Below are positions 16,973 to 49,434 of a stretch of 64,000 nt of DNA, piece by piece. How positions within the stretch are numbered: the first letter of the stretch is position 1; each line of letters starts with the position of its first letter. Below the pieces are notes generated by a model. The model saw nothing but the letters and a program-made list of their open reading frames with translations, searched no databases and was not told where the DNA came from. The stretch lies in the NCBI GenBank assembly GCA_964106645.2, contig OZ067039.1. One strand, 5' to 3'. The stretch is from Podarcis pityusensis (lineage: Eukaryota). A program made the position numbers and the translations under genes.

Positions 16973-18497
16973 ATGCCTCCTAAGAAAGCCGCTGCTCGTC
17001 CCGCCTCGGCCTCTGGTGCTAAACGGCCTATTAGAGGTCCATCGCAGGCGCTTCGCTCTCCTACCCCAAGGCAACCGGTGGGACGGGTGCAATCCTTGGT
17101 AGAAAGTATGGCCGGCAATCCAGCAGCATTGTCTCGCTTCGCAGCCGAAATGGATGGTTTCCTGCAACACTGCTCTGCACAGCCTTCCACGTCTGGGAGG
17201 CGTCCTTGCCCAGTAGTGGCATCATCTCCAGCGTCGCCGTCCTCTAGTGAAGAAGGGAGAGATGGCTCATTATCTAGGGGTTTGATAGCCGATTCCCAGC
17301 TTGCTCGGTCCCGTGTCTTACCTGCTGCTCGCGGCCGTTCGCGGAGGCCGCGCCGTTCCGCTGGGAGGGCCGCGGGAAGGCAAAACCCCTTGGCCCCTTC
17401 CACCCGCCGAGCTGTGCGCACCCAACCTTCGGATGAGGTGGCATCGGGTTCAGGCCTATCACTGGTTGTTTCTCCTCAGTCTGCTCCAGGTACATCACAG
17501 CTGAGCCCTGATTCTGAGTCTTCCATTGAGGACAGCTTGCCGGTTCCCGCCAGGAAGTCTTCGGGCGGAAAACGTCGCCGCAGAAGGTCTTCCCGGAAAC
17601 ATGCCAAGCGAAGGAGGGGTGAATCATCTTCCTCGTATTCTGGTACGTCATCCTCCAGTTCTGATGATGAGTCTGGCAATTCCAGGGAACTTTATTGGGG
17701 TTTTGGAGAATCGGCCTCGGGATTGCCTCGGTGGGCTTGGGATCGGAGGGCCAACACGCACCGCGCAAGGTATGGGGCGGTCCAGGAGTGCAGGGATGGC
17801 GTGTTGGTGCCTGACGTTAAAGTCTCTACCAATTCTGCTAGGGACATTATCCCTGGTTTGCATTTGTCAACAAAACTGCGGTCCAGGATTCTGAACGGCC
17901 GTTATGTGGACATCTTCAAATTGGCCCCTCCTTCGGAGGACCAGGAGGCAGGGAAGTCGCCCAAAAAACGCCAGGGCACTCCCTCAGTAGACAGGACTTT
18001 CGAGCATTGGCTCGATTGTTTCCAGGTCTTTGCTGGTGTGGTGGTGGCAGCTTACCCTCGGAGATCTCTTCATTTGATAGTGTACTTGTCTATTGTTCGC
18101 TCTGCTTTCACCAAAGCTGGTGAGAAAGCTGCGATAAAATATGATGAGAACTTCAGGCGCCGCGCCGCTAGGATCCCCTCAGCACGATGGGATCGTAAGG
18201 ATCTCGACGTGTGGACCACCCATGTAGCTCCACATCGATAAGAAAGCGCCGGAGCAACAGAAGTCGAGGACTGGGGCGTTTAGGACTAGCCGTCGTTTCC
18301 CATGCTGGGATTATAATAAGGGTTCTTGTCAGCGGCAGGGGTGTAGGTATGCCCACATTTGTGAGAAATGCAATGGTTCGCATCCTGCCTCCTCTTGTTT
18401 TGGCAATCGGCGGCCCTTTCGTGGCGGAAAAGGGGGTTCTCAGCAAACCCCCAAGCAAAACACCCCTCTCGCTCCTGCCCCAGGCACAGGAAAATGA
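16973..18497 (+). CDS. Gag-like ORF1 of the YR retrotransposon, frameshifted at ~18230
   Basis: 422-aa ORF (Ser/Arg-rich N-terminus; I..GRYVD, W..CF..F, YDE.FR motifs) stops at 18241. The CCCH+CCHC zinc fingers (CWDYNKGSCQRQGCRYAHICEKCNGSHPASSC) continue in another frame, 18231-18497. Confidence 0.85.
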
Positions 18498-18510
18498 GCT
18501 TTTGTCAGCC

Positions 18511-20103
18511 ATGGCTCATACCCCTGTTCGGTTGCCGGCCCTGCAGCTTTGGTTGCAGTCTTATCCTAACAGGGATGCTGCAGGTTATTTGAGGGATGGT
18601 TTTTCTGTTGGTTTCCGGATTCCGGTAGCCATGCCTCCCGTGGCACGGAATCCGTCTAACCAAAAATCGATTCGTGAGCTACCTGACGTCGCTCGCAGAA
18701 AGATTGCAAAGGAGCTGGCCATGCATCGGATGGCCGGTCCTTTTGATGCCCCTCCCTTTCATAATTTGCATGTATCCCCATTGGGTATTGTCCCAAAGAA
18801 GGCTCCGGGTGAATTTCGTTTAATTCATAATTTGTCACATCCTAGGGGTACTTCAGTCAATGATGTTATCCCCCCGGAGCTTTGCTCCGTGAAGTATGCA
18901 TCTCTTGATCAGGCGATCAAGATGATTAGGAAGTTCGGCCACGCTGCCCTATTGGCAAAATGCGACATTGAGTCGGCATTCCGCCTTCTCCCAATTCACC
19001 CGGATGATTTTTGGCTACTGGGTTTTCAGTTTGAGGGCAAGTATTACTTTGACAAAGCCATGCCTATGGGTTGTTCAATAGCCTGCGCTGCCTTTGAATC
19101 ATTTAGCACCTTTCTCGAGTGGGCCCTTAAATTTAAAACAGGATTGGGCGGGGTCACGCATTATTTGGATGATTTTTTATTGGCCTCGGCTCACGATACT
19201 GGTGAGTGCTCGGTGTTGCTACAGGCCTTTGCTGACCTTACGCAGGAGCTGGGGGTTCCGCTTGCTTCGGAAAAGACCGAGGGTCCATCTACTCAGCTTA
19301 CGTATTTGGGTATCCTGTTGGATACGGTTGCCCAGACTTCTAGTTTGCCAATGGACAAGCTAGTAGCCTTGAAGAAGGTCATAGAGGAACTGCTCCCTTT
19401 GAAGAAAGCATCTCTTCTACAAATTCAGTCATTGTTGGGGCATCTGAATTTCGCGTGCAGGGTGGTGGCGCCTGGGCGCCCTTTCTGTTCGCGCCTGGCT
19501 CGCCTCACTGTGGGATTGAGGGCCCCTCATCATAGGGTGCGCCTATCTAAGGAGGTGAGGGCCGATCTTTCCATATGGCTGGAATTCCTGGAGGAATTCA
19601 ATGGGGTGTCGTTATGGCAAGACACTTTAAACTTGCAAAATGATTTTCAGGTACAATCGGATGCTGCAGGTTCCCTGGGTTTTGGTCTTTACTGGAAGGG
19701 GCGGTGGTGCGCAGAGCGTTGGCCGCCTGAGTGGCAGGGAGGAGAAATTACACGGGACCTAACATTTCTCGAGTTTTTTCCCATTGCAGTGGCTGTGCAT
19801 TTGTGGGTCGAGGAATTCAGGAACCGTCGTGTCTGCTTCTGGACCGATAATCAGGCGGTGGTGAACGTGCTGGCGAAACTGTCATCACGCTCTCCCAGGG
19901 TGTCGGCCTTATTGCGGGCCTTCGTGTTGCATTGTTTACGTCATAATATAGTGTTCTCTGCACGTTTTATTCCTGGGGTGTCTAACGAAATTGCTGATGC
20001 TCTGTCCCGTTTTCAGATGGAGCGGTTCAGACTTCTGGTTCCAGAGGCGCGGATACGTCCGGAGTATTTCCCGGATCATCTCTGGAACCTTGGCAGCAAT
20101 TAG
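18511..20103 (+). CDS. Reverse transcriptase / RNase H (DIRS/Ngaro pol)
   Basis: Motifs SPLGIVPKK, FRLIHNLS, KCDIESAFR, MPMG, YLDDF, YLGI; RNase H SDA...LE...TDN...ADALSR. ATG in GCCATGG context (the frame is open from before 18211). Confidence 0.95.
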   Translation: MAHTPVRLPALQLWLQSYPNRDAAGYLRDGFSVGFRIPVAMPPVARNPSNQKSIRELPDVARRKIAKELAMHRMAGPFDAPPFHNLHVSPLGIVPKKAPGEFRLIHNLSHPRGTSVNDVIPPELCSVKYASLDQAIKMIRKFGHAALLAKCDIESAFRLLPIHPDDFWLLGFQFEGKYYFDKAMPMGCSIACAAFESFSTFLEWALKFKTGLGGVTHYLDDFLLASAHDTGECSVLLQAFADLTQELGVPLASEKTEGPSTQLTYLGILLDTVAQTSSLPMDKLVALKKVIEELLPLKKASLLQIQSLLGHLNFACRVVAPGRPFCSRLARLTVGLRAPHHRVRLSKEVRADLSIWLEFLEEFNGVSLWQDTLNLQNDFQVQSDAAGSLGFGLYWKGRWCAERWPPEWQGGEITRDLTFLEFFPIAVAVHLWVEEFRNRRVCFWTDNQAVVNVLAKLSSRSPRVSALLRAFVLHCLRHNIVFSARFIPGVSNEIADALSRFQMERFRLLVPEARIRPEYFPDHLWNLGSN

Positions 20104-20987
20104 TTTTGCAGGGAGTAGCGGCTTCGGTTTCACCTTCTACCCTTAGATCTTACACAAAGGCTTGGACCGATTTTTTGACATTTACGCGCCAGACAACCTC
20201 TAATTTAGAGGGTGTTCCCCCCACCTCCTCGCAGGTGTTGAGCTATTTAGCACATTTATTTCAGTTAGGGCGGGCAGCAAGAACTATTAAGATACAGGCG
20301 GCTGCCATAGCCTTTTTCTGTAAGACATTTTATGATAAGGACCCTTGTGCGAGGTTTATAGTGCGCAGGGCCCTCGAAGGCTGGAGCAGACTTCGTCCGT
20401 CCCAGCCGGCCTCACGGTGCCCCATTTCCTTTGATTTGTTGAGTAGGATGCGCAAGAGGCTGCGGGTGGTATGCTGGTCGGGGTACGAGGCTCGCCTTTT
20501 CTCGGCTGCCTTTTCTATTGCCTTTTTTGGAGCCCTGAGAGTGGGTGAGCTGGTATTTGAAGATATCAGAGATGGTCGTTCCAGGGGCCTTTTGCTCAGG
20601 GACGTGCAGCTAACCCCCGCAGAATTGAAAATCACAGTCAGAAATTCTAAGACTGATCAGAAGGGTAGGGGTGCCGTCATTCGTCTCCCTGCTACGGGAG
20701 AGGCAGGCCCTTGCCCTGTGAAGGATGTCAGTAAATACTTAGCAGTACGCGTCACGGGTGATGGGCCTCTGCTTAGACATGAAAATGGGTCGCCCCTAAC
20801 GAGACGCCAGTTTGCACAGGTGATGCGTAAAGCGATTCTCGCTTGTGACGGCACGTCGGATGGTTTCGCCCCTCACTCCTTTAGGATTGGGGCCGCAACA
20901 ACGGCTGCTCATTGGGGTTTGTCGGCCGCTAGGATAAAGGATTTGGGGCGCTGGAAGTCGAATGCCTTTCGGGGCTATGTTCGTTAG
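19998..20987 (+). CDS. Tyrosine recombinase (lambda-integrase family); no initiating ATG
   Basis: Catalytic set intact: GALRVGEL (R), SKTDQ (K), HSFRIG (HxxR), GRWKS (W), GYVR (Y). The frame is open from 19998 and overlaps the end of RNase H. Confidence 0.93.
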   Translation, partial: CSVPFSDGAVQTSGSRGADTSGVFPGSSLEPWQQLVLQGVAASVSPSTLRSYTKAWTDFLTFTRQTTSNLEGVPPTSSQVLSYLAHLFQLGRAARTIKIQAAAIAFFCKTFYDKDPCARFIVRRALEGWSRLRPSQPASRCPISFDLLSRMRKRLRVVCWSGYEARLFSAAFSIAFFGALRVGELVFEDIRDGRSRGLLLRDVQLTPAELKITVRNSKTDQKGRGAVIRLPATGEAGPCPVKDVSKYLAVRVTGDGPLLRHENGSPLTRRQFAQVMRKAILACDGTSDGFAPHSFRIGAATTAAHWGLSAARIKDLGRWKSNAFRGYVR

Positions 20988-21603
20988 TACTTTCGGACTC
21001 TTATACTGTTTGTTTTTGTTTATCTCAGGTCTGGCGGCTGTTCGCATCTGGTTGGTGGGGCACAGCATCATCCATTGGGCTGCTGTCGCAGCACGGCAGT
21101 CCAGGCTGGGTCCAGGTCTCGGCTTCCCTCCACATGTGCAGCTGTCATGGCTGTCCAGACGGGGTATGCGCTGGTCAGAGTTCCTGCCGAGGATTCGGAG
21201 GCAGTTGCTCTTGGAAGGGCAGCCCACGGCTATTGTGGTGCAGCTGGGTGAGAACGACCTGGTATCCGTGGACTGTTTATCACTTCGTGCTGCAATTTTG
21301 AGTGACTTGGAGATGCTGCGAACATTGGTGCCGTCAGCTAAAATATTTTGGTCTAAGCTATTGCAACGCCGCATTTGGATGGGCAGTCGTTGCCCGGCAG
21401 CCACAGAAAGGGCCAGAAAACGCATCAATTCTGCGGTGGCTAAGAAGATTTCTGAGTTGGGTGGTGATGTGATTTCCCATCCGGTGATTCGTTTTCAAGC
21501 TGCGCCCCTTTTTAGGGCTGATGGTGTGCACCTCTCTGCCTCAGGGAATGAGGTTTGGCTGGGTGCAGTGGTGGCCAAGCTGAGGGCTTGGTTGGGGCTG
21601 TGA
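20962..21603 (+). CDS. SGNH/GDSL hydrolase (esterase-like) ORF
   Basis: Block I WLVGHS, block II RRGM, block III QLGEND, block V DGVHL. The domain probably begins at the acceptor at 21029. Confidence 0.88.
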   Translation: MPFGAMFVSTFGLLYCLFLFISGLAAVRIWLVGHSIIHWAAVAARQSRLGPGLGFPPHVQLSWLSRRGMRWSEFLPRIRRQLLLEGQPTAIVVQLGENDLVSVDCLSLRAAILSDLEMLRTLVPSAKIFWSKLLQRRIWMGSRCPAATERARKRINSAVAKKISELGGDVISHPVIRFQAAPLFRADGVHLSASGNEVWLGAVVAKLRAWLGL

Positions 21604-30654: not shown

Positions 30655-31044
<390 letters not shown>

Positions 31045-32963: not shown

Positions 32964-32972
32964 TTATTATTA

Positions 32973-33013
<41 letters not shown>
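32964..33013. repeat. (ATT)n microsatellite
   Basis: Directly visible in the sequence. Confidence 0.9.
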
Positions 33014-33016
<3 letters not shown>

Positions 33017-38843: not shown

Positions 38844-39917
38844 TAATGTTAATCAGCCAAAGGCCTGGTTAAAGAGAAACTGGCGCCTAGCACCTAAAGA
38901 TATGTAATGAAGGCACCAGGTCAGCCTTAGTTGGTTGTTTCTGAGACAATGAACAGGCTTCCAAGTTTTCAAGCATGCTGTCCGTAGATATGTGACATAA
39001 TACAGAGACTACTGAGCCAAAGTTTATCATTATATGCAGAGTACTCTTAAATCACAGCCAACATGTCCACATAATATACCTTATCTAAAAGTGCAGATGC
39101 TGGCCACATCAGTTCAGACTATATTTTGAAGTGGGGTTTGCCTCATAGAATCAATAATGGAAGTTTTATTAACATATATTGAAATGATTTAATTGTCAAA
39201 GGAAGTGATTTCTATATGAACGCTTCTACAAAATAGCAGATCCTATTTGTGTATTATTGGACAATGATATTGTGGGATAAAAGTTTAGACAAGAAAAAAT
39301 GTGTTTATAAGTGAATAGACTTGAAAAACAAATAAATCTCAGGCAGTAAACTAAAAAGAAGTTTGCTAGTAGCAAAGGCAGTTGAACTTTTTCAACTTTT
39401 GCAACCAGAAAGAACATGTGCAAATCTGTACAATTCTGTAAAAGAACTGAATCTTGGCACAGAATTCTAGGCTCCCTTCTTCTACTAAACGCTGCTTAGT
39501 AAAAATCCTTCATTCTCACGTAAATACTGTTGCTTACTAGCTTGTTATAAATTACTACTGCTGTTATTACTGTTGCATCTTCATATAAGATAATAAGAGC
39601 ATGCAAGGTGCATCAAACAGGTTAGAGCAGTAGCAAGAGAGAAGAGATCCCAAAAGAGGAAGCAAGGGAAGCTCAGAATGTTAAATCTCATATAGGCATA
39701 AGCCCCAAAGAAGCTATCCAGAAAAAATTGCAGTGCTAAGAAGTTATTGATAAATGATTTACATACTCTGCATGGAAAATGAAGAGAAAAAAATTGCTCA
39801 CTGAAGGAAACAGAGTTGCACAATACCTGGAACAAAGCAAATCCAAGATGGTATGATATCCAAGCAGTGTGAAAAGTTTTATGGATTAAGATTTCTAGTT
39901 GGCTTTAAGTATGAATG

Positions 39918-39948
<31 letters not shown>

Positions 39949-40279
39949 TAGCTAGTAAGCCACAAATGGAAGAACAAAGCTCATTGGGAAATAGATTACA
40001 CAAAACAAGTAACTGCTTACACACACATATATACACATACACAGAGAGTCTCATAGAAATAAAAGACAAACTGAAATGCATCCAAAAAGAAACTTTTCAA
40101 CTTTCAGGCACTCCTCAATGAATCTGTGAAAAACTAATGAAGACTAAAATAATCTAGAAGGAGCCATAGTTCCTCCTAAAATTAGGAATAAGTTAAAATC
40201 GTGACTCCATACTAGAACCTTAGCAGTCAACTCCATAATAATAAAACAAATGGAGTATGGCTATATTCACAAAGGGCTA

Positions 40280-40830
40280 GATCAACATGGTTTAAAGCTA
40301 AACCTACTGAATTAATTCATAAATTGTCATTGCAACATAGATTATTTATATAAAAATTCTTTTGTTGCTTTTCTACTAAAAGAATTCAAAGTGACTTACA
40401 ATGTAATGGATGATGAGAAAACAGTGGATATTTTATCTGGGTTTTAGTAAAGCATTTCATACAGCACTATACAATAACTTATGGTTAGAAAGCCAACATA
40501 AGATGTCTTGGACAATTAGTACAATCAAATGGATCAAAAACTGGCTATCTAACCGTATTAAGAGAGTAATCGTAACTGGCAGTCCATCTAGATGGGGAGA
40601 GATTTCCAGTGGGATCCAGGGATCGCAATTCGGTCCCATTTTGTTTTATATCTTTATAAAAGATCTGGAAGACAAAGTAGAGAATATGCTAAATAAGTCT
40701 TTTGGCTTCTACTAATTAGGGAATGGTGAGCAGAGCTAGAACTAACATAGTAGTTGTAAAATAACTCTAAATACTTCTTTGAAATTGGATGATAGATTTA
40801 CAGACCATATTCTAAATTAAATGTGAGACA
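40280..40830 (+). mobile_element. Ancient CR1 LINE reverse-transcriptase fragment
   Basis: QHG; YLGFSKAFHT (cf. YLDFSKAFDT); [17 protein letters not shown]...[21 protein letters not shown] (cf. GVPQGSVLGPVLFNIFINDL). Confidence 0.85.
40554..40664 (-). CDS. GABRB2: GABRB2 cassette exon of the long isoform (beta-2L), 37 aa
   Basis: ctttgtcttccag|ATC...ACG|gttaga; 111 nt, phase 0-0. Translation [37 protein letters not shown] matches the recalled human insert [38 protein letters not shown]. Confidence 0.9.
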
Positions 40831-43039
40831 GAAGATAACAGAACACATGGGAGCTTCACAGAAGAAAACAATAGTAGGCTTTGCTAGTCATGTCTGTGTC
40901 AAATATCCAAAATGATTTGAGCCTTTTGGACTCAAATACGTCATATCTCTTAAAAAGCCAAAGACATTGTCACATGGAATGGCAGAAGAGGAAACGATCT
41001 CACATGGAGGTAAATTATAAGAGCTAAGTGGATAGAGAGCTTGATGAAAGTAAAGAGAATAAGGAATAACATGACAGTCAACTGCAGGAGATTCAGTCAG
41101 AAGTAGAGGTGTAAGTGCAATTAAAGCCATTAAAACCAATTGATCTGACAAAACAAGCATTATGGTAATCTTGACACTATCTTCCCAGGCTGAATGTGTG
41201 GTGTCAGCACTGAACAAATTACACATTTAGAACATAACAGAAAGGGAATTCATGGAAAATCAATGGAAGAGGGGCTTCAATGGAGCTGAAGCAGCTTTGG
41301 ATCAAGATTTAATGCGTAAAATATAATATAATTGATCTATGAATGCATGTTTTCTTGGTAAATGGCTGTGAAATCACCATATGGGCAAACCCTTATGTTT
41401 CTTTTGCTAGCAAAACTGAATTAAAGGAAGAATTGAGATGCAGAGTCAAATATATAAACACAAAGTTCACATACTTATAGCATGGATACCCAAAAAAGAA
41501 AAGAAAAAAAAGGAGATACTTGGTAAGAACAGAATGTGAATGTGAAACAGAACAAACAGGTTTCACAGTATATTTGATTCATGGGCAAACCTTTGAGCCC
41601 TAAACTCCACCCTGGAATGCTAAAAACCTGACAATGGCACTTGGGTAAACATCAAGCAGCTGCATTCAGGACAATAGACAAGAAGTAGAAAGGTGTTACC
41701 ACTAAGCATGTCTGAGGGCTGTCAATTACTAGGACAGGAGCAACAGGACACATTCTATTAGATTTTGCTTCTGTGCTGGCAATCATTATGTTGAGTAGAT
41801 TGCTTTCTGTTTTTTGTCCGGAGCTGGAACTTTAGGGACTGACTGTGGTTATAAAAATTAAATAACAAAAATATTTTGGGAGACACTGTTGAGAGGATCC
41901 ACAGCATCAATTCAGATAGGCTTATCTGGAATGGTATTAGGCCAAAACTTGACTGTTTTTGCAATTTATTCTGTGTCGAGTTAAGGGCTTCTTGTCTGCC
42001 TGTGAATTTGGTCTGCTTTTTTAGCAGTTGTCTTTTAGATTTTATCAGTTTAATGGGTTATAATTTACTTCTGGTATTTTTTTTGGTGTTGTTATTATAC
42101 AGCACCCTGGGATTCATTGGTATGGAAGGTGAATTAGAAACATTAGCAATAAAGTAATTAATAAAACCTGAGACTGATACCCTTCTTTATAATTTGTAAA
42201 AGCTTGAGAAACACCCCTTTGGCATGCACAATTCTTGTCCTCTCCTATTTGATTTCCTCTTCCTTTTCCTTTGTCTATAGCTTCCATGGCAACCATGGTT
42301 ACACTTGAAACTGATATTTGAAACCATAAATCAGGCATTCTAGCTGCACCCCCATCCTCATGGTTGCTGCCCTATTTGTGATGGCAGTGGGGAAGTCTCC
42401 TGTACTCATGGAGGCTTCTGAACATTTTAAAAACCACAAAACATGAGGGTTCCAAAACCTCCACAGATACAGGTCTCCCTGATGCAGACAGCCACTGAGG
42501 AACATTTAGAGGACGACGATGAGGAGGATGAACAGGCAGAACTAGTATGCTTGTGGACATTGTTCCCTCCTTACATGTTGACTTAAGCCCTATTCACTAT
42601 AGTGCTGTTTACAGTACTGAAAAGAGAAGGGTTGGGAGAATTCAGGCCAGATGGAGAAGATAGATCAGGTGGGCCCTTCAGGATTTAGGGAAATTTATAC
42701 TTGCACCAAGCTACACACAAAGGTTGTTGAAAGAATAAATGAAGCTATGCTGCTGTTGTTTCCAAGAAGGGTTTTCTGAAGAGTGAGAATTGTGACCCCT
42801 TAGAAAATAAGAAATGTTGCAAGTTACCTTTTATGAAACATCAGACAACTAATAGCACCACAAAACTGATACTTTGATTAAAAAAATCACAACAGTTTTG
42901 TCATGCCCTATGATACACTGGAGGAACACTTGGTTGTATCTAAAATGTTGGTTCATCTCTGGAGATAAAGTTCTGAAACCATTTTCCTTTGGCACCTGAA
43001 ACTTCACACTGGCTTCCATTGGCCTCTGGAAGCAGTGAC

Positions 43040-46366: not shown

Positions 46367-46642
<276 letters not shown>

Positions 46643-47209
46643 TCAAAAAATTCAAAATAGTGTGTGTGTATAGATATAGATAGATATAGATATATAGATA
46701 AAAATATTAGGGGGAGCTGGAGTTCACTCTAGAGTAGAACTAGAAGAAATATTTTCCATACTAGCTTCTTTTTGGTTTTTGGGTGGTGATGCTTATTACA
46801 GTAATGAGCAAAAAAACATTAAATGCTACGAATTCTCAAAGTCAACACCATGGAAATCTTTCCACTTGTGTATCGCACAGGTTATAAGGTGCACCTATTT
46901 CTTCAGTGTGCTGGTTTTGCTTAATATTTTTTTACATGTTGTCTTCTGGTTTGAATTCTCAGAAAAATCTTGCTTGAAGACCTTGTGCAATATACATTAG
47001 CTTGAATCGAGGGAACAGTAGAGAATGCATTCAACCTTCCTTTAGGTAATGTTTCTTCTTAAGAGCTATGGAAACTTGACAAGGCTTAAGTTTAAATTTG
47101 CATTAGAGTTGGATCCTTACCTGGAATGCAAGGTTCAGCAAACTCAAAAGGCTTGCTAATGTAAACTGATTTTAAAAGACCAGCTATATTAGTTTGTAGC
47201 AGCAATTAT

Positions 47210-47218
47210 TAATTAATA

Positions 47219-47266
<48 letters not shown>

Positions 47267-49281: not shown

Positions 49282-49434
49282 CTAAAGCCACTCTGGCAGC
49301 TGAAGCATCATAATTGATCCAGAATGAAACCCAGGAGAGAATAGTGATCAGAATGGAAGGCATGTAGGTCTGAAGTATGAAGTAGCCAATGTTTCTCTTG
49401 AGTTTGAAACTGAGCGACAGCCTTGGATAGGAAC
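49282..49434 (-). CDS. GABRB2: GABRB2 exon (pre-M1, TM1, start of TM2), 153 nt
   Basis: ttctag|GTTCCTAT...GCTTTAG|gtaagc; [50 protein letters not shown]. Confidence 0.97.

What the first reader, a model, noticed from the sequence alone, without database searches (positions are those of the whole stretch)
40280..40830. The GABRB2 long-isoform exon is the antisense strand of a CR1 LINE reverse transcriptase
Seen: the 111-nt exon (40664-40554, minus strand, canonical AG/GT, phase 0) encodes [37 protein letters not shown]. The same bases on the plus strand read [35 protein letters not shown], inside a longer decayed CR1 RT (YLGFSKAFHT, WIKNWL). Known: CR1 RT has RVV.NG..S.W..V.SGVPQGSVLGP.LFNIFINDL, and mammalian beta-2L carries a 38-aa insert of nearly this sequence. 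Inference: a CR1 insertion older than the mammal-reptile split was exonised antisense and kept as a coding cassette in the M3-M4 loop of a neurotransmitter receptor. I cannot tell whether this origin has already been published.
Basis: partly seen in the sequence, partly recalled or inferred. Interest (0 to 1): 0.82.

Follow-up and report, generated by a model that had tools for sequence, protein, structure and literature searches.

The report
GABRB2 cassette exon from antisense CR1
The optional 37-codon exon of the GABA-A receptor beta-2 gene lies on the opposite strand of a 270-base fossil of a CR1/L3 jumping-gene reverse transcriptase; this is real and very old, but the human exon was already noted in print as lying in an L3 LINE fragment.

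Summary
Window 40664-40554 (minus strand) is an open 111-nt, phase-0 exon with AG/GT. It sits between the GABRB2 M3 exon (ends 46385) and the last exon (starts 31002). Its last 31 residues align to the 38-residue insert of long-form beta-2 chains in the PDB (E 5.5e-7).

The plus strand holds a 101-codon open frame, codon-aligned with the exon. Positions 40428-40697 match CR1-type endonuclease-plus-RT proteins of birds, turtles and a frog:
- phmmer down to E 3.6e-26 against 1.84 billion proteins;
- tblastn E 7.6e-18, the only RT hit in the 64 kb;
- profile E 2.8e-26.

The 126 intronic bases outside the exon are significant on their own (22.9 bits against at most 5.9 in 2000 shuffles).

The RT alignment and the receptor alignment place the only length difference at the same codon. 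There the mammalian Trp codon is the reverse complement of the RT's conserved Pro codon.

A second species (L001) keeps this block at 93-95% identity, while sequence beyond the wider 40396-41129 region does not align.

Use of the exon in this species could not be tested, because no RNA runs were found. Zhao et al. 2009 (PMC2741204) already reported human exon 10 and its flanks as annotated LINE3. The origin is therefore known in outline.

The parts
40554..40664 (-). GABRB2 alternative cassette exon ('exon 10', long isoform): 111 nt, 37 codons, phase 0
   Evidence: Open translation. AG/GT read. Residues 7-37 align to residues 366-397 of 512-residue beta-2 chains, E 5.5e-7 to 3.4e-6.
40665..40697 (-). 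3' end of the upstream intron: pyrimidine tract and acceptor AG (40666-40665). It is the antisense of purine-rich RT codons following motif B.
   Evidence: Still inside the RT match. 31 of 33 bases identical to L001.
40428..40553 (-). First 126 nt of the downstream intron, including the weak donor GT (40553-40552). It is the antisense of RT motif A and the linker.
   Evidence: The intronic flank alone scores 22.9 bits (E 1.7e-9) on the RT profile at collinear positions 181-221; the best of 2000 shuffles scores 5.9 bits. 92.9% identical to L001.
40428..40697 (+). Relic of a CR1-clade (L3-type) LINE reverse transcriptase, motif A through motif B, ending just before motif C
   Evidence: phmmer. 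tblastn with 12 long APE+RT proteins, E 7.6e-18 to 7.8e-14, the only hit in the window. Profile HMM positions 181-270 of 510, E 2.8e-26. Pfam RVT_1 positions 67-144 of 205, E 0.0015, below the cut-off.
40410..40715 (+). Stop-free 101-codon plus-strand ORF left over from the RT frame, in the same codon register as the exon
   Evidence: The substitution pattern against L001 gives no sign of protein-level constraint in this frame: 21 non-synonymous and 7 synonymous, with a stop in L001 at 40422.
40396..40864 (.). Block conserved with a second species (L001, Logan SRR22184598); its core at 40428-40697 coincides with the RT relic
   Evidence: blastn 86% over 479 nt. Identity by segment is 75%, 93%, 95.5%, 94%, 76% and 71%; it is about 29% to the left (40300-40395) and 37% to the right (40865-40983), then 69% again at 40984-41129.
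46385..46629 (-). GABRB2 exon encoding M2-M3 and the start of the M3-M4 loop (upstream neighbour of the cassette)
   Evidence: Best PDB matches are beta-2 chains (166 bits, against 143 for beta-3 and 123 for beta-1), covering residues 279-359 of the 512-residue chain.
30655..31002 (-). GABRB2 last coding exon (rest of the loop, M4, stop codon)
   Evidence: Beta-2 scores 241 bits, against 155 for beta-1 and 140 for beta-3. It starts at residue 360 of 474-residue chains and at residue 398 of 512-residue chains, which leaves a 38-residue insert slot.
49282..49434 (-). GABRB2 exon encoding M1-M2 (153 nt)
   Evidence: Motif scan and splice-site reading; boundaries read by eye.
40480..40557 (-). Inverted repeat (two 16-nt arms, 88% complementary, 46 nt apart) that could pair the 5' splice site with downstream intron
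   Evidence: It is part of the MFE fold, but the fold z-score is only -1.06. The two L001 differences inside the arms weaken pairs rather than compensate. Speculative.

Best explanation
A CR1-clade (mammalian name L3) LINE inserted, in the orientation opposite to the gene, into the last intron of GABRB2. This happened in an ancestor shared by this animal (probably a squamate) and mammals.

On the gene strand, the antisense of the RT-coding sequence supplied every part of the exon:
- an open frame in the same codon register as the RT frame;
- a pyrimidine tract plus AG, which is the antisense of the purine-rich acidic/lysine codons and of a Leu codon just after RT motif B;
- a weak GT donor, which is the antisense of an Asn codon in the linker between motifs A and B.

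The spliceosome adopted this as a 3n, phase-0 cassette. It adds 37 residues here (38 in mammals) to the M3-M4 cytoplasmic loop of the beta-2 subunit.

Selection on the exon and on about 160 nt of flanking splice-control sequence froze 270 nt of the element. The rest of the LINE decayed beyond recognition.

Shown here: the RT homology, its extent, the codon register, the gene context, homology with the long-form insert, and conservation in a second species. Inferred: the timing, actual inclusion in mRNA in this species, and the selective reason.
For: Exon and splice sites. Flanking exons are beta-2, not beta-1 or beta-3.

RT match for the plus-strand ORF:
- 7413 phmmer hits, about 40-45% identity over ORF residues 7-96.
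- Hits are APE+RT proteins, named from Limosa, Mycteria, Grus, three sea turtles and a frog.
- It is the only RT hit in the 64 kb. Profile E is 2.8e-26.
- The intronic flank is significant on its own.

Link to mammals. The exon aligns to the long-form insert with one gap at Trp. The RT alignments have one gap at the Pro of the conserved V-P-Q-G motif. In the codon-aligned antisense register these are the same codon, and TGG is the reverse complement of CCA. The 38-codon form is therefore the more RT-like, ancestral state, and this lineage lost exactly one codon.

Conservation. L001 keeps the same 111-nt frame, AG and GT. Identity is 93-95% in the relic, against 29-37% in the poorly aligned stretches beside the conserved region.

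Literature. PMC2741204 reports that human exon 10, from -85 to +66, is annotated LINE3. It also reports exon 10 in mammals and lizard.
Against: - Inclusion in this species is unproven.
- The window's taxon was not established by a tool.
- Pfam RVT_1 alone is below its cut-off (18.7 against 29.6 bits).
- CR1 versus L2 was not tested against labelled references.
- All five exon differences from L001 are non-synonymous in the exon frame. This pair therefore gives no dN/dS support for protein-level constraint. The invariance of the first 70 nt, synonymous sites included, points to RNA-level constraint at least as much as to protein constraint.
- The mammalian CaMKII site Thr365 (PMC2741204) is Ala here.
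Confidence: 0.9

Rival explanations
1. The conserved block is kept for a non-coding reason, such as an intronic splicing or transcriptional control element. The 'exon' is not spliced into mRNA in this species, and its open frame is a by-product of slow change.
For: The flanking intron is as conserved as the exon (93-95%). The first 70 nt of the exon have no change at all, not even synonymous. All five changes are non-synonymous. PMC2741204 reports that rat brain lacked detectable exon 10 expression despite having the sequence. There is no RNA evidence here.
Against: AG, GT, the 3n length and the open frame are intact in both sauropsid sequences. The only length change against mammals is exactly one codon. 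21 of the 31 compared residues are shared with the expressed mammalian insert. Strongly conserved flanks are typical of regulated cassette exons (established knowledge).
Confidence: 0.15
2. The plus-strand 101-codon ORF is itself functional, as a domesticated RT fragment or an antisense gene. On this view, that is why the RT frame stayed open.
For: 101 codons without a stop at about 33% GC is unusual. A gene caller predicted the orthologous ORF as a protein (P0001).
Against: Changes in this frame against L001 are 21 non-synonymous to 7 synonymous, and L001 has a stop at 40422. The motif A Asp is replaced by Gly. Motif C is decayed and followed by a stop in the window. The fragment is only about 90 residues of an RT. 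High nucleotide conservation since an ancestrally open frame explains the openness.
Confidence: 0.02
3. The RT resemblance is chance. Alternatively, CR1 elements captured a receptor exon rather than the reverse.
For: None beyond the short length of the match.
Against: E-values run from 1e-14 to 1e-26 against 1.84e9 proteins. The intronic flank is significant on its own. The matched motifs are the universal RT motifs A and B of thousands of elements from many animals. [quoted passage not shown]
Confidence: 0.01

Closest known systems
Human GABRB2 exon 10 (beta-2L cassette) annotated as LINE3 in the UCSC RepeatMasker track, as noted by Zhao et al. 2009, PLoS One 4:e6977 (PMC2741204)
   Same: It is the same gene and the same intron slot. 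The peptide is homologous. The LINE annotation likewise spans the exon plus tens of bases of intron on each side: -85/+66 in human, and 33 nt upstream plus 126 nt downstream in gene orientation here.
   Different: This copy is a non-mammalian orthologue with 37 rather than 38 codons. It lacks the Thr365 CaMKII site. The paper gives no strand, RT-domain, codon-register or dating analysis.
Exonised ancient LINE/SINE fragments in mammals (MIR, L2, CR1/L3), surveyed by Sela et al. 2007, Genome Biol 8:R127 (PMC2394776)
   Same: An intronic transposed element supplies the splice sites and the coding sequence of an alternatively spliced cassette. That survey counts 18 CR1 exonisations in human (12 + 6 in its two orientation columns).
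   Different: The survey found only six TE exons orthologous between human and mouse, and none was CR1. This exon appears shared across amniotes and is in-frame coding. GABRB2 was not found in that paper's main text or in its supplements held as text.
LF-SINE-derived ultraconserved alternative exon of PCBP2 (Bejerano et al. 2006; from my own knowledge, and cited as 'ultraconserved exons from an old SINE' in PMC2394776)
   Same: An ancient retroposon fragment is preserved at very high identity, together with flanking intron, because it became a regulated alternative exon.
   Different: The source there is a SINE, not the protein-coding RT region of a LINE. Here the exon reads the antisense of RT codons, codon for codon.
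Antisense Alu exonisation (established knowledge; PMC2330237 among the hits)
   Same: In both, the antisense strand of the element supplies the pyrimidine tract and the AG.
   Different: In Alu the tract comes from the antisense of the poly-A tail, and the exons are young, mostly non-coding or frame-disrupting, and primate-specific. Here the tract comes from purine-rich RT codons, and the exon is old and in frame.

Membership tests
CR1-clade (L3) non-LTR retrotransposon, RT domain | Significant similarity to reverse transcriptase, with motifs in the right order | tested here: met
   ORF residues 7-96 match RT motifs A to B without rearrangement. Evidence: phmmer, tblastn E 7.6e-18, profile positions 181-270, E 2.8e-26. 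Pfam RVT_1 falls on the right profile segment (67-144) but is below the cut-off.
CR1-clade (L3) non-LTR retrotransposon, RT domain | Closest relatives are CR1-type elements (APE + RT ORF2) rather than L1, R2 or other clades | tested here: inconclusive
   The long hits carry Exo_endo_phos + RVT_1. The named hits come from birds, sea turtles and a frog, where CR1 is the dominant LINE (established knowledge). No solved chain with an RT name (L1 ORF2p or R2 included) was among the eight hits at E<=10. No labelled L2 or Rex references were available to exclude sister clades. The human orthologue is annotated L3 (PMC2741204).
CR1-clade (L3) non-LTR retrotransposon, RT domain | Intact catalytic residues (motif A Asp, motif C FADD), i.e. 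a potentially active element | tested here: not met
   Motif A has Gly where the relatives have Asp. The FADD region is unrecognisable and is followed by a stop. This is a dead relic, not an active member.
CR1-clade (L3) non-LTR retrotransposon, RT domain | Rest of the element (APE, C-terminal region, 3' UTR hairpin and microsatellite tail) | tested here: not met
   Nothing collinear was found within +-3 kb, even at E<=20 or with a 510-position profile. Only 270 nt survive.
GABRB2 long-isoform cassette exon (beta-2L insert) | Lies in the intron between the M3 exon and the last exon of the beta-2 gene, on the gene strand | tested here: met
   The flanking exons score best to beta-2 chains. The insert slot is residues 360-397 of the 512-residue chains.
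GABRB2 long-isoform cassette exon (beta-2L insert) | Peptide homologous to the 38-residue mammalian insert | tested here: met
   Residues 7-37 align to residues 366-397, E 5.5e-7, with 21 identities and one 1-residue gap.
GABRB2 long-isoform cassette exon (beta-2L insert) | Canonical splice sites, length a multiple of 3, phase 0 on both sides | tested here: met
GABRB2 long-isoform cassette exon (beta-2L insert) | Alternative inclusion in brain mRNA | not testable with these tools
Expression in human, monkey and mouse, but not rat, is from PMC2741204.
GABRB2 long-isoform cassette exon (beta-2L insert) | CaMKII consensus site at Thr365 (mature numbering), proposed to underlie faster current run-down | tested here: not met
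   In the alignment the position of Thr365 (488-residue chain numbering) is Ala in the window. It is also Ala in L001.

The most novel reading that the evidence does not exclude
This may be one of the oldest transposon-derived protein-coding cassette exons, about the age of amniotes. It would also be an unusually clean case: the reading frame, the pyrimidine tract with AG, and the donor GT were all supplied by the antisense of LINE RT codons around motif B. It would then have been conserved codon for codon in a neurotransmitter receptor. Such a case has not been analysed explicitly beyond a one-line RepeatMasker remark, and it was absent from a genome-wide list of human-mouse orthologous TE exons, which contained no CR1 exon.
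Probability: 0.45. Interest if true: 0.45.

Novelty: already known. Interest (0 to 1): 0.3.

Why it matters
The case shows how a receptor gained a regulated intracellular-loop segment from junk DNA read backwards. It also dates that event to deep amniote history. Because the frozen 270-nt block marks what selection actually protects, it points to the flanking intron as splice-control sequence worth testing. That bears on GABRB2 long/short isoform ratios, which have been linked to schizophrenia in the human literature. The absence of the Thr365 site in this lineage suggests that the conserved role of the insert lies in its N-terminal two-thirds or in splicing itself, not in that phosphosite. 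The core fact, an L3 annotation over exon 10, is already public, so the finding is confirmatory rather than new.

Tried and rejected
1. Looking for more of the LINE around the exon. tblastn at E<=20 with 12 long RT proteins, and a 510-position profile on all six frames of 39000-42000, gave only 40428-40697. Two weak collinear tblastn matches near 40887-40991 (E 0.47 and 4.5) were not supported by the profile, and I rejected them.

2. RNA family or structure as the reason for conservation. There was no Rfam match and the fold z-score was -1.06. The splice-site hairpin has no compensatory support.

3. dN/dS in the exon frame versus the RT frame. With only one orthologue and five exon differences, the test is uninformative.

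5. The protein cluster of P0007 (73% identical to the ORF, more RT-like, and with the extra codon). I take it for the mammalian, possibly human, orthologue of this antisense ORF. I therefore did not fetch its contigs or compare it further.

6. The spliced receptor model was never joined. Exons were searched one by one by reference.

7. PDB search with the ORF gave only chance coiled-coil hits.

8. Paper searches for GABRB2 with exonisation or transposable-element terms found nothing beyond PMC2741204. The supplements of PMC2394776 held as text do not list GABRB2.

Full report
**Observation.**
- The bases just outside are AG (40666-40665, after a pyrimidine tract) and GT (40553-40552, in a weak GTTAGA context).
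- The upstream receptor exon ends on a full codon at 46385 followed by GTAAGT.
- The last exon begins on a full codon at 31002 after AG. The cassette is therefore phase 0 on both sides, and both inclusion and skipping keep the frame.
- On the plus strand the same bases, in the same codon register, sit inside a 101-codon stop-free ORF at 40410-40715.

**Gene identity.** I searched each exon separately by reference and never joined them.
- The 81 complete codons (46385-46627) of the exon at 46385-46629 score best to solved GABA-A beta-2 chains: 166 bits, against 143 for beta-3 and 123 for beta-1.
- The last exon scores 241 bits to beta-2, against 155 for beta-1 and 140 for beta-3.
- In 474-residue chains the two exons abut at residues 359/360. 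In 512-residue chains they are separated by residues 360-397. That is the 38-residue long-form insert slot.
E is 5.5e-7, with 21 identities and one single-residue gap opposite a Trp.
- An M1-M2 exon lies at 49282-49434.

**Reverse-transcriptase homology.** Pfam alone is suggestive but sub-threshold. RVT_1 gives E 0.0015 and 18.7 bits, on profile positions 67-144 of 205.

The exhaustive phmmer search of 1.84 billion representatives is decisive. It found 7413 proteins at E<=1e-3 and 162 at E<=1e-10. Typical hits are 40-45% identical over ORF residues 7-96.
- The long hits have the endonuclease-plus-RT architecture of non-LTR elements.
- The named hits come from birds (Limosa, Mycteria, Grus), sea turtles (Lepidochelys, Natator, Eretmochelys) and a frog. 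In those genomes CR1 is the dominant LINE (established knowledge).
- Pairwise alignments show the classic CR1 pattern from motif A, through the W-I-x-N-W-L linker, to motif B.

**Extent of the relic.**
- Twelve long RT proteins hit the 64-kb window only at 40428-40697, with E from 7.6e-18 to 7.8e-14.
- A profile of eleven RTs gives one domain there, positions 181-270 of 510, E 2.8e-26. Nothing else appears in six frames of 39000-42000.
- So the relic is 270 nt: the 111-nt exon, 126 nt of downstream intron and 33 nt of upstream intron (gene orientation).
It fails. The 42 purely intronic codons score 22.9 bits (E 1.7e-9) at the collinear profile positions, against at most 5.9 bits in 2000 shuffles. 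They also match all twelve RT proteins collinearly.
- The relic is dead. Motif A has Gly for the catalytic Asp, and motif C is unrecognisable and followed by a stop.

**A cross-check that ties in mammals.**
- The RT alignments need one gap in the window, at the Pro of the conserved V-P-Q-G motif.
- The receptor alignment needs one gap in the window, at a Trp.
- In the codon-aligned antisense register these are the same codon position, and TGG is the reverse complement of CCA.
- Two independent alignments on opposite strands thus agree on a one-codon deletion in this lineage.
- They also show that the 38-codon form is the more RT-like, ancestral state.

**Conservation.** The best phmmer hit, P0001 (87% identity), comes from a 1200-bp Logan contig of another organism (L001).
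- L001 aligns to 40396-40864 at 86%.
- Identity is 93% in 40428-40553, 95.5% in the exon and 94% in 40665-40697.
- It is 70-76% in the next tens of bases on each side.
- It is about 29% at 40300-40395 and 37% at 40865-40983, where the sequences effectively do not align, with a weaker patch (69%) at 40984-41129.
- The highly conserved core therefore coincides with the RT relic. Ancient similarity survives only where selection froze the sequence.
- L001 keeps the 111-nt frame, AG and GT.
- All five exon differences lie in the last 41 nt and are non-synonymous in the exon frame. The first 70 nt are invariant, including synonymous sites.
- In the RT frame the changes are 21 non-synonymous to 7 synonymous, plus a stop in L001. 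So the plus-strand ORF is not under protein constraint.
- Conservation looks partly RNA-level, as is usual for regulated cassette exons.

**Mechanism.**
- A CR1-type LINE inserted antisense into the last intron.
- The antisense of purine-rich codons after motif B gave a pyrimidine tract and AG.
- The antisense of an Asn codon in the linker gave a weak GT.
- The antisense frame happened to be open. The result is a 3n cassette in the M3-M4 loop.
- In mammals the insert changes current run-down, and Thr365 was proposed as a CaMKII site (PMC2741204). In the alignment that position is Ala here, and also in L001. The conserved function is therefore unlikely to be that phosphosite.

**Prior art.** Zhao et al. 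2009 (PMC2741204) report three relevant points:
- Human exon 10, from 85 bp upstream to 66 bp downstream, is annotated as a candidate LINE3.
- The intron is 14-19 kb in non-mammalian land vertebrates. It is 15.4 kb here.

They give no analysis of strand, RT domain or age. Sela et al. 2007 (PMC2394776) count 18 CR1 exonisations in human. They found no CR1 exon among the six human-mouse orthologous TE exons. The origin is thus known in outline. The codon-level anatomy and the sauropsid orthologue are added detail.

**Limits.**
- No RNA run holds the locus.
- I take the P0007 cluster for the mammalian, possibly human, orthologue. I did not fetch its contigs or compare it further.
- The window's taxon was not established by a tool. 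An earlier unchecked note of this scan calls the genome a lizard.
- CR1 versus sister clades such as L2 was not tested against labelled references.

Noticed in passing
window 16973-21603 (+): Four consecutive long ORFs (422, 630, 293 and 213 aa). The second has RVT_1 (E 1.8e-12). The third has a weak tyrosine-recombinase (Phage_integrase) match and the fourth a weak GDSL-type esterase match, both below the Pfam cut-offs. The first matches no family. It looks like a nearly intact tyrosine-recombinase retrotransposon (DIRS/Ngaro type), downstream of GABRB2 on the opposite strand.
   Followed up: partly
window 40480-40495 and 40542-40557: A 16-nt inverted repeat (88% complementary, 46 nt apart) straddles the cassette exon's 5' splice site and could sequester it in a hairpin. 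The two differences in L001 weaken rather than compensate it.
   Followed up: partly
window 40984-41129: A second, weaker patch conserved with L001 (about 70% identity) lies in the upstream intron, about 320-465 nt from the cassette exon. It shows no RT similarity and its function is unknown.
   Followed up: no
proteins P0007, P0151-P0154: A cluster of gene-caller 'proteins' seen on dozens of Logan contigs and one ENA contig. They appear to be the antisense RT-frame ORF of the same exon in mammals. This illustrates how this frozen LINE frame gets mis-predicted as a protein. I left them alone because they are possibly human-derived.
   Followed up: no
window 32964-33014 and 47214-47266: Two (TTA)n/(TAA)n microsatellites of about 17 copies lie in the GABRB2 introns. 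TA- and TCTA-rich simple repeats occur near 39920-39950 and 46650-46700.
   Followed up: no
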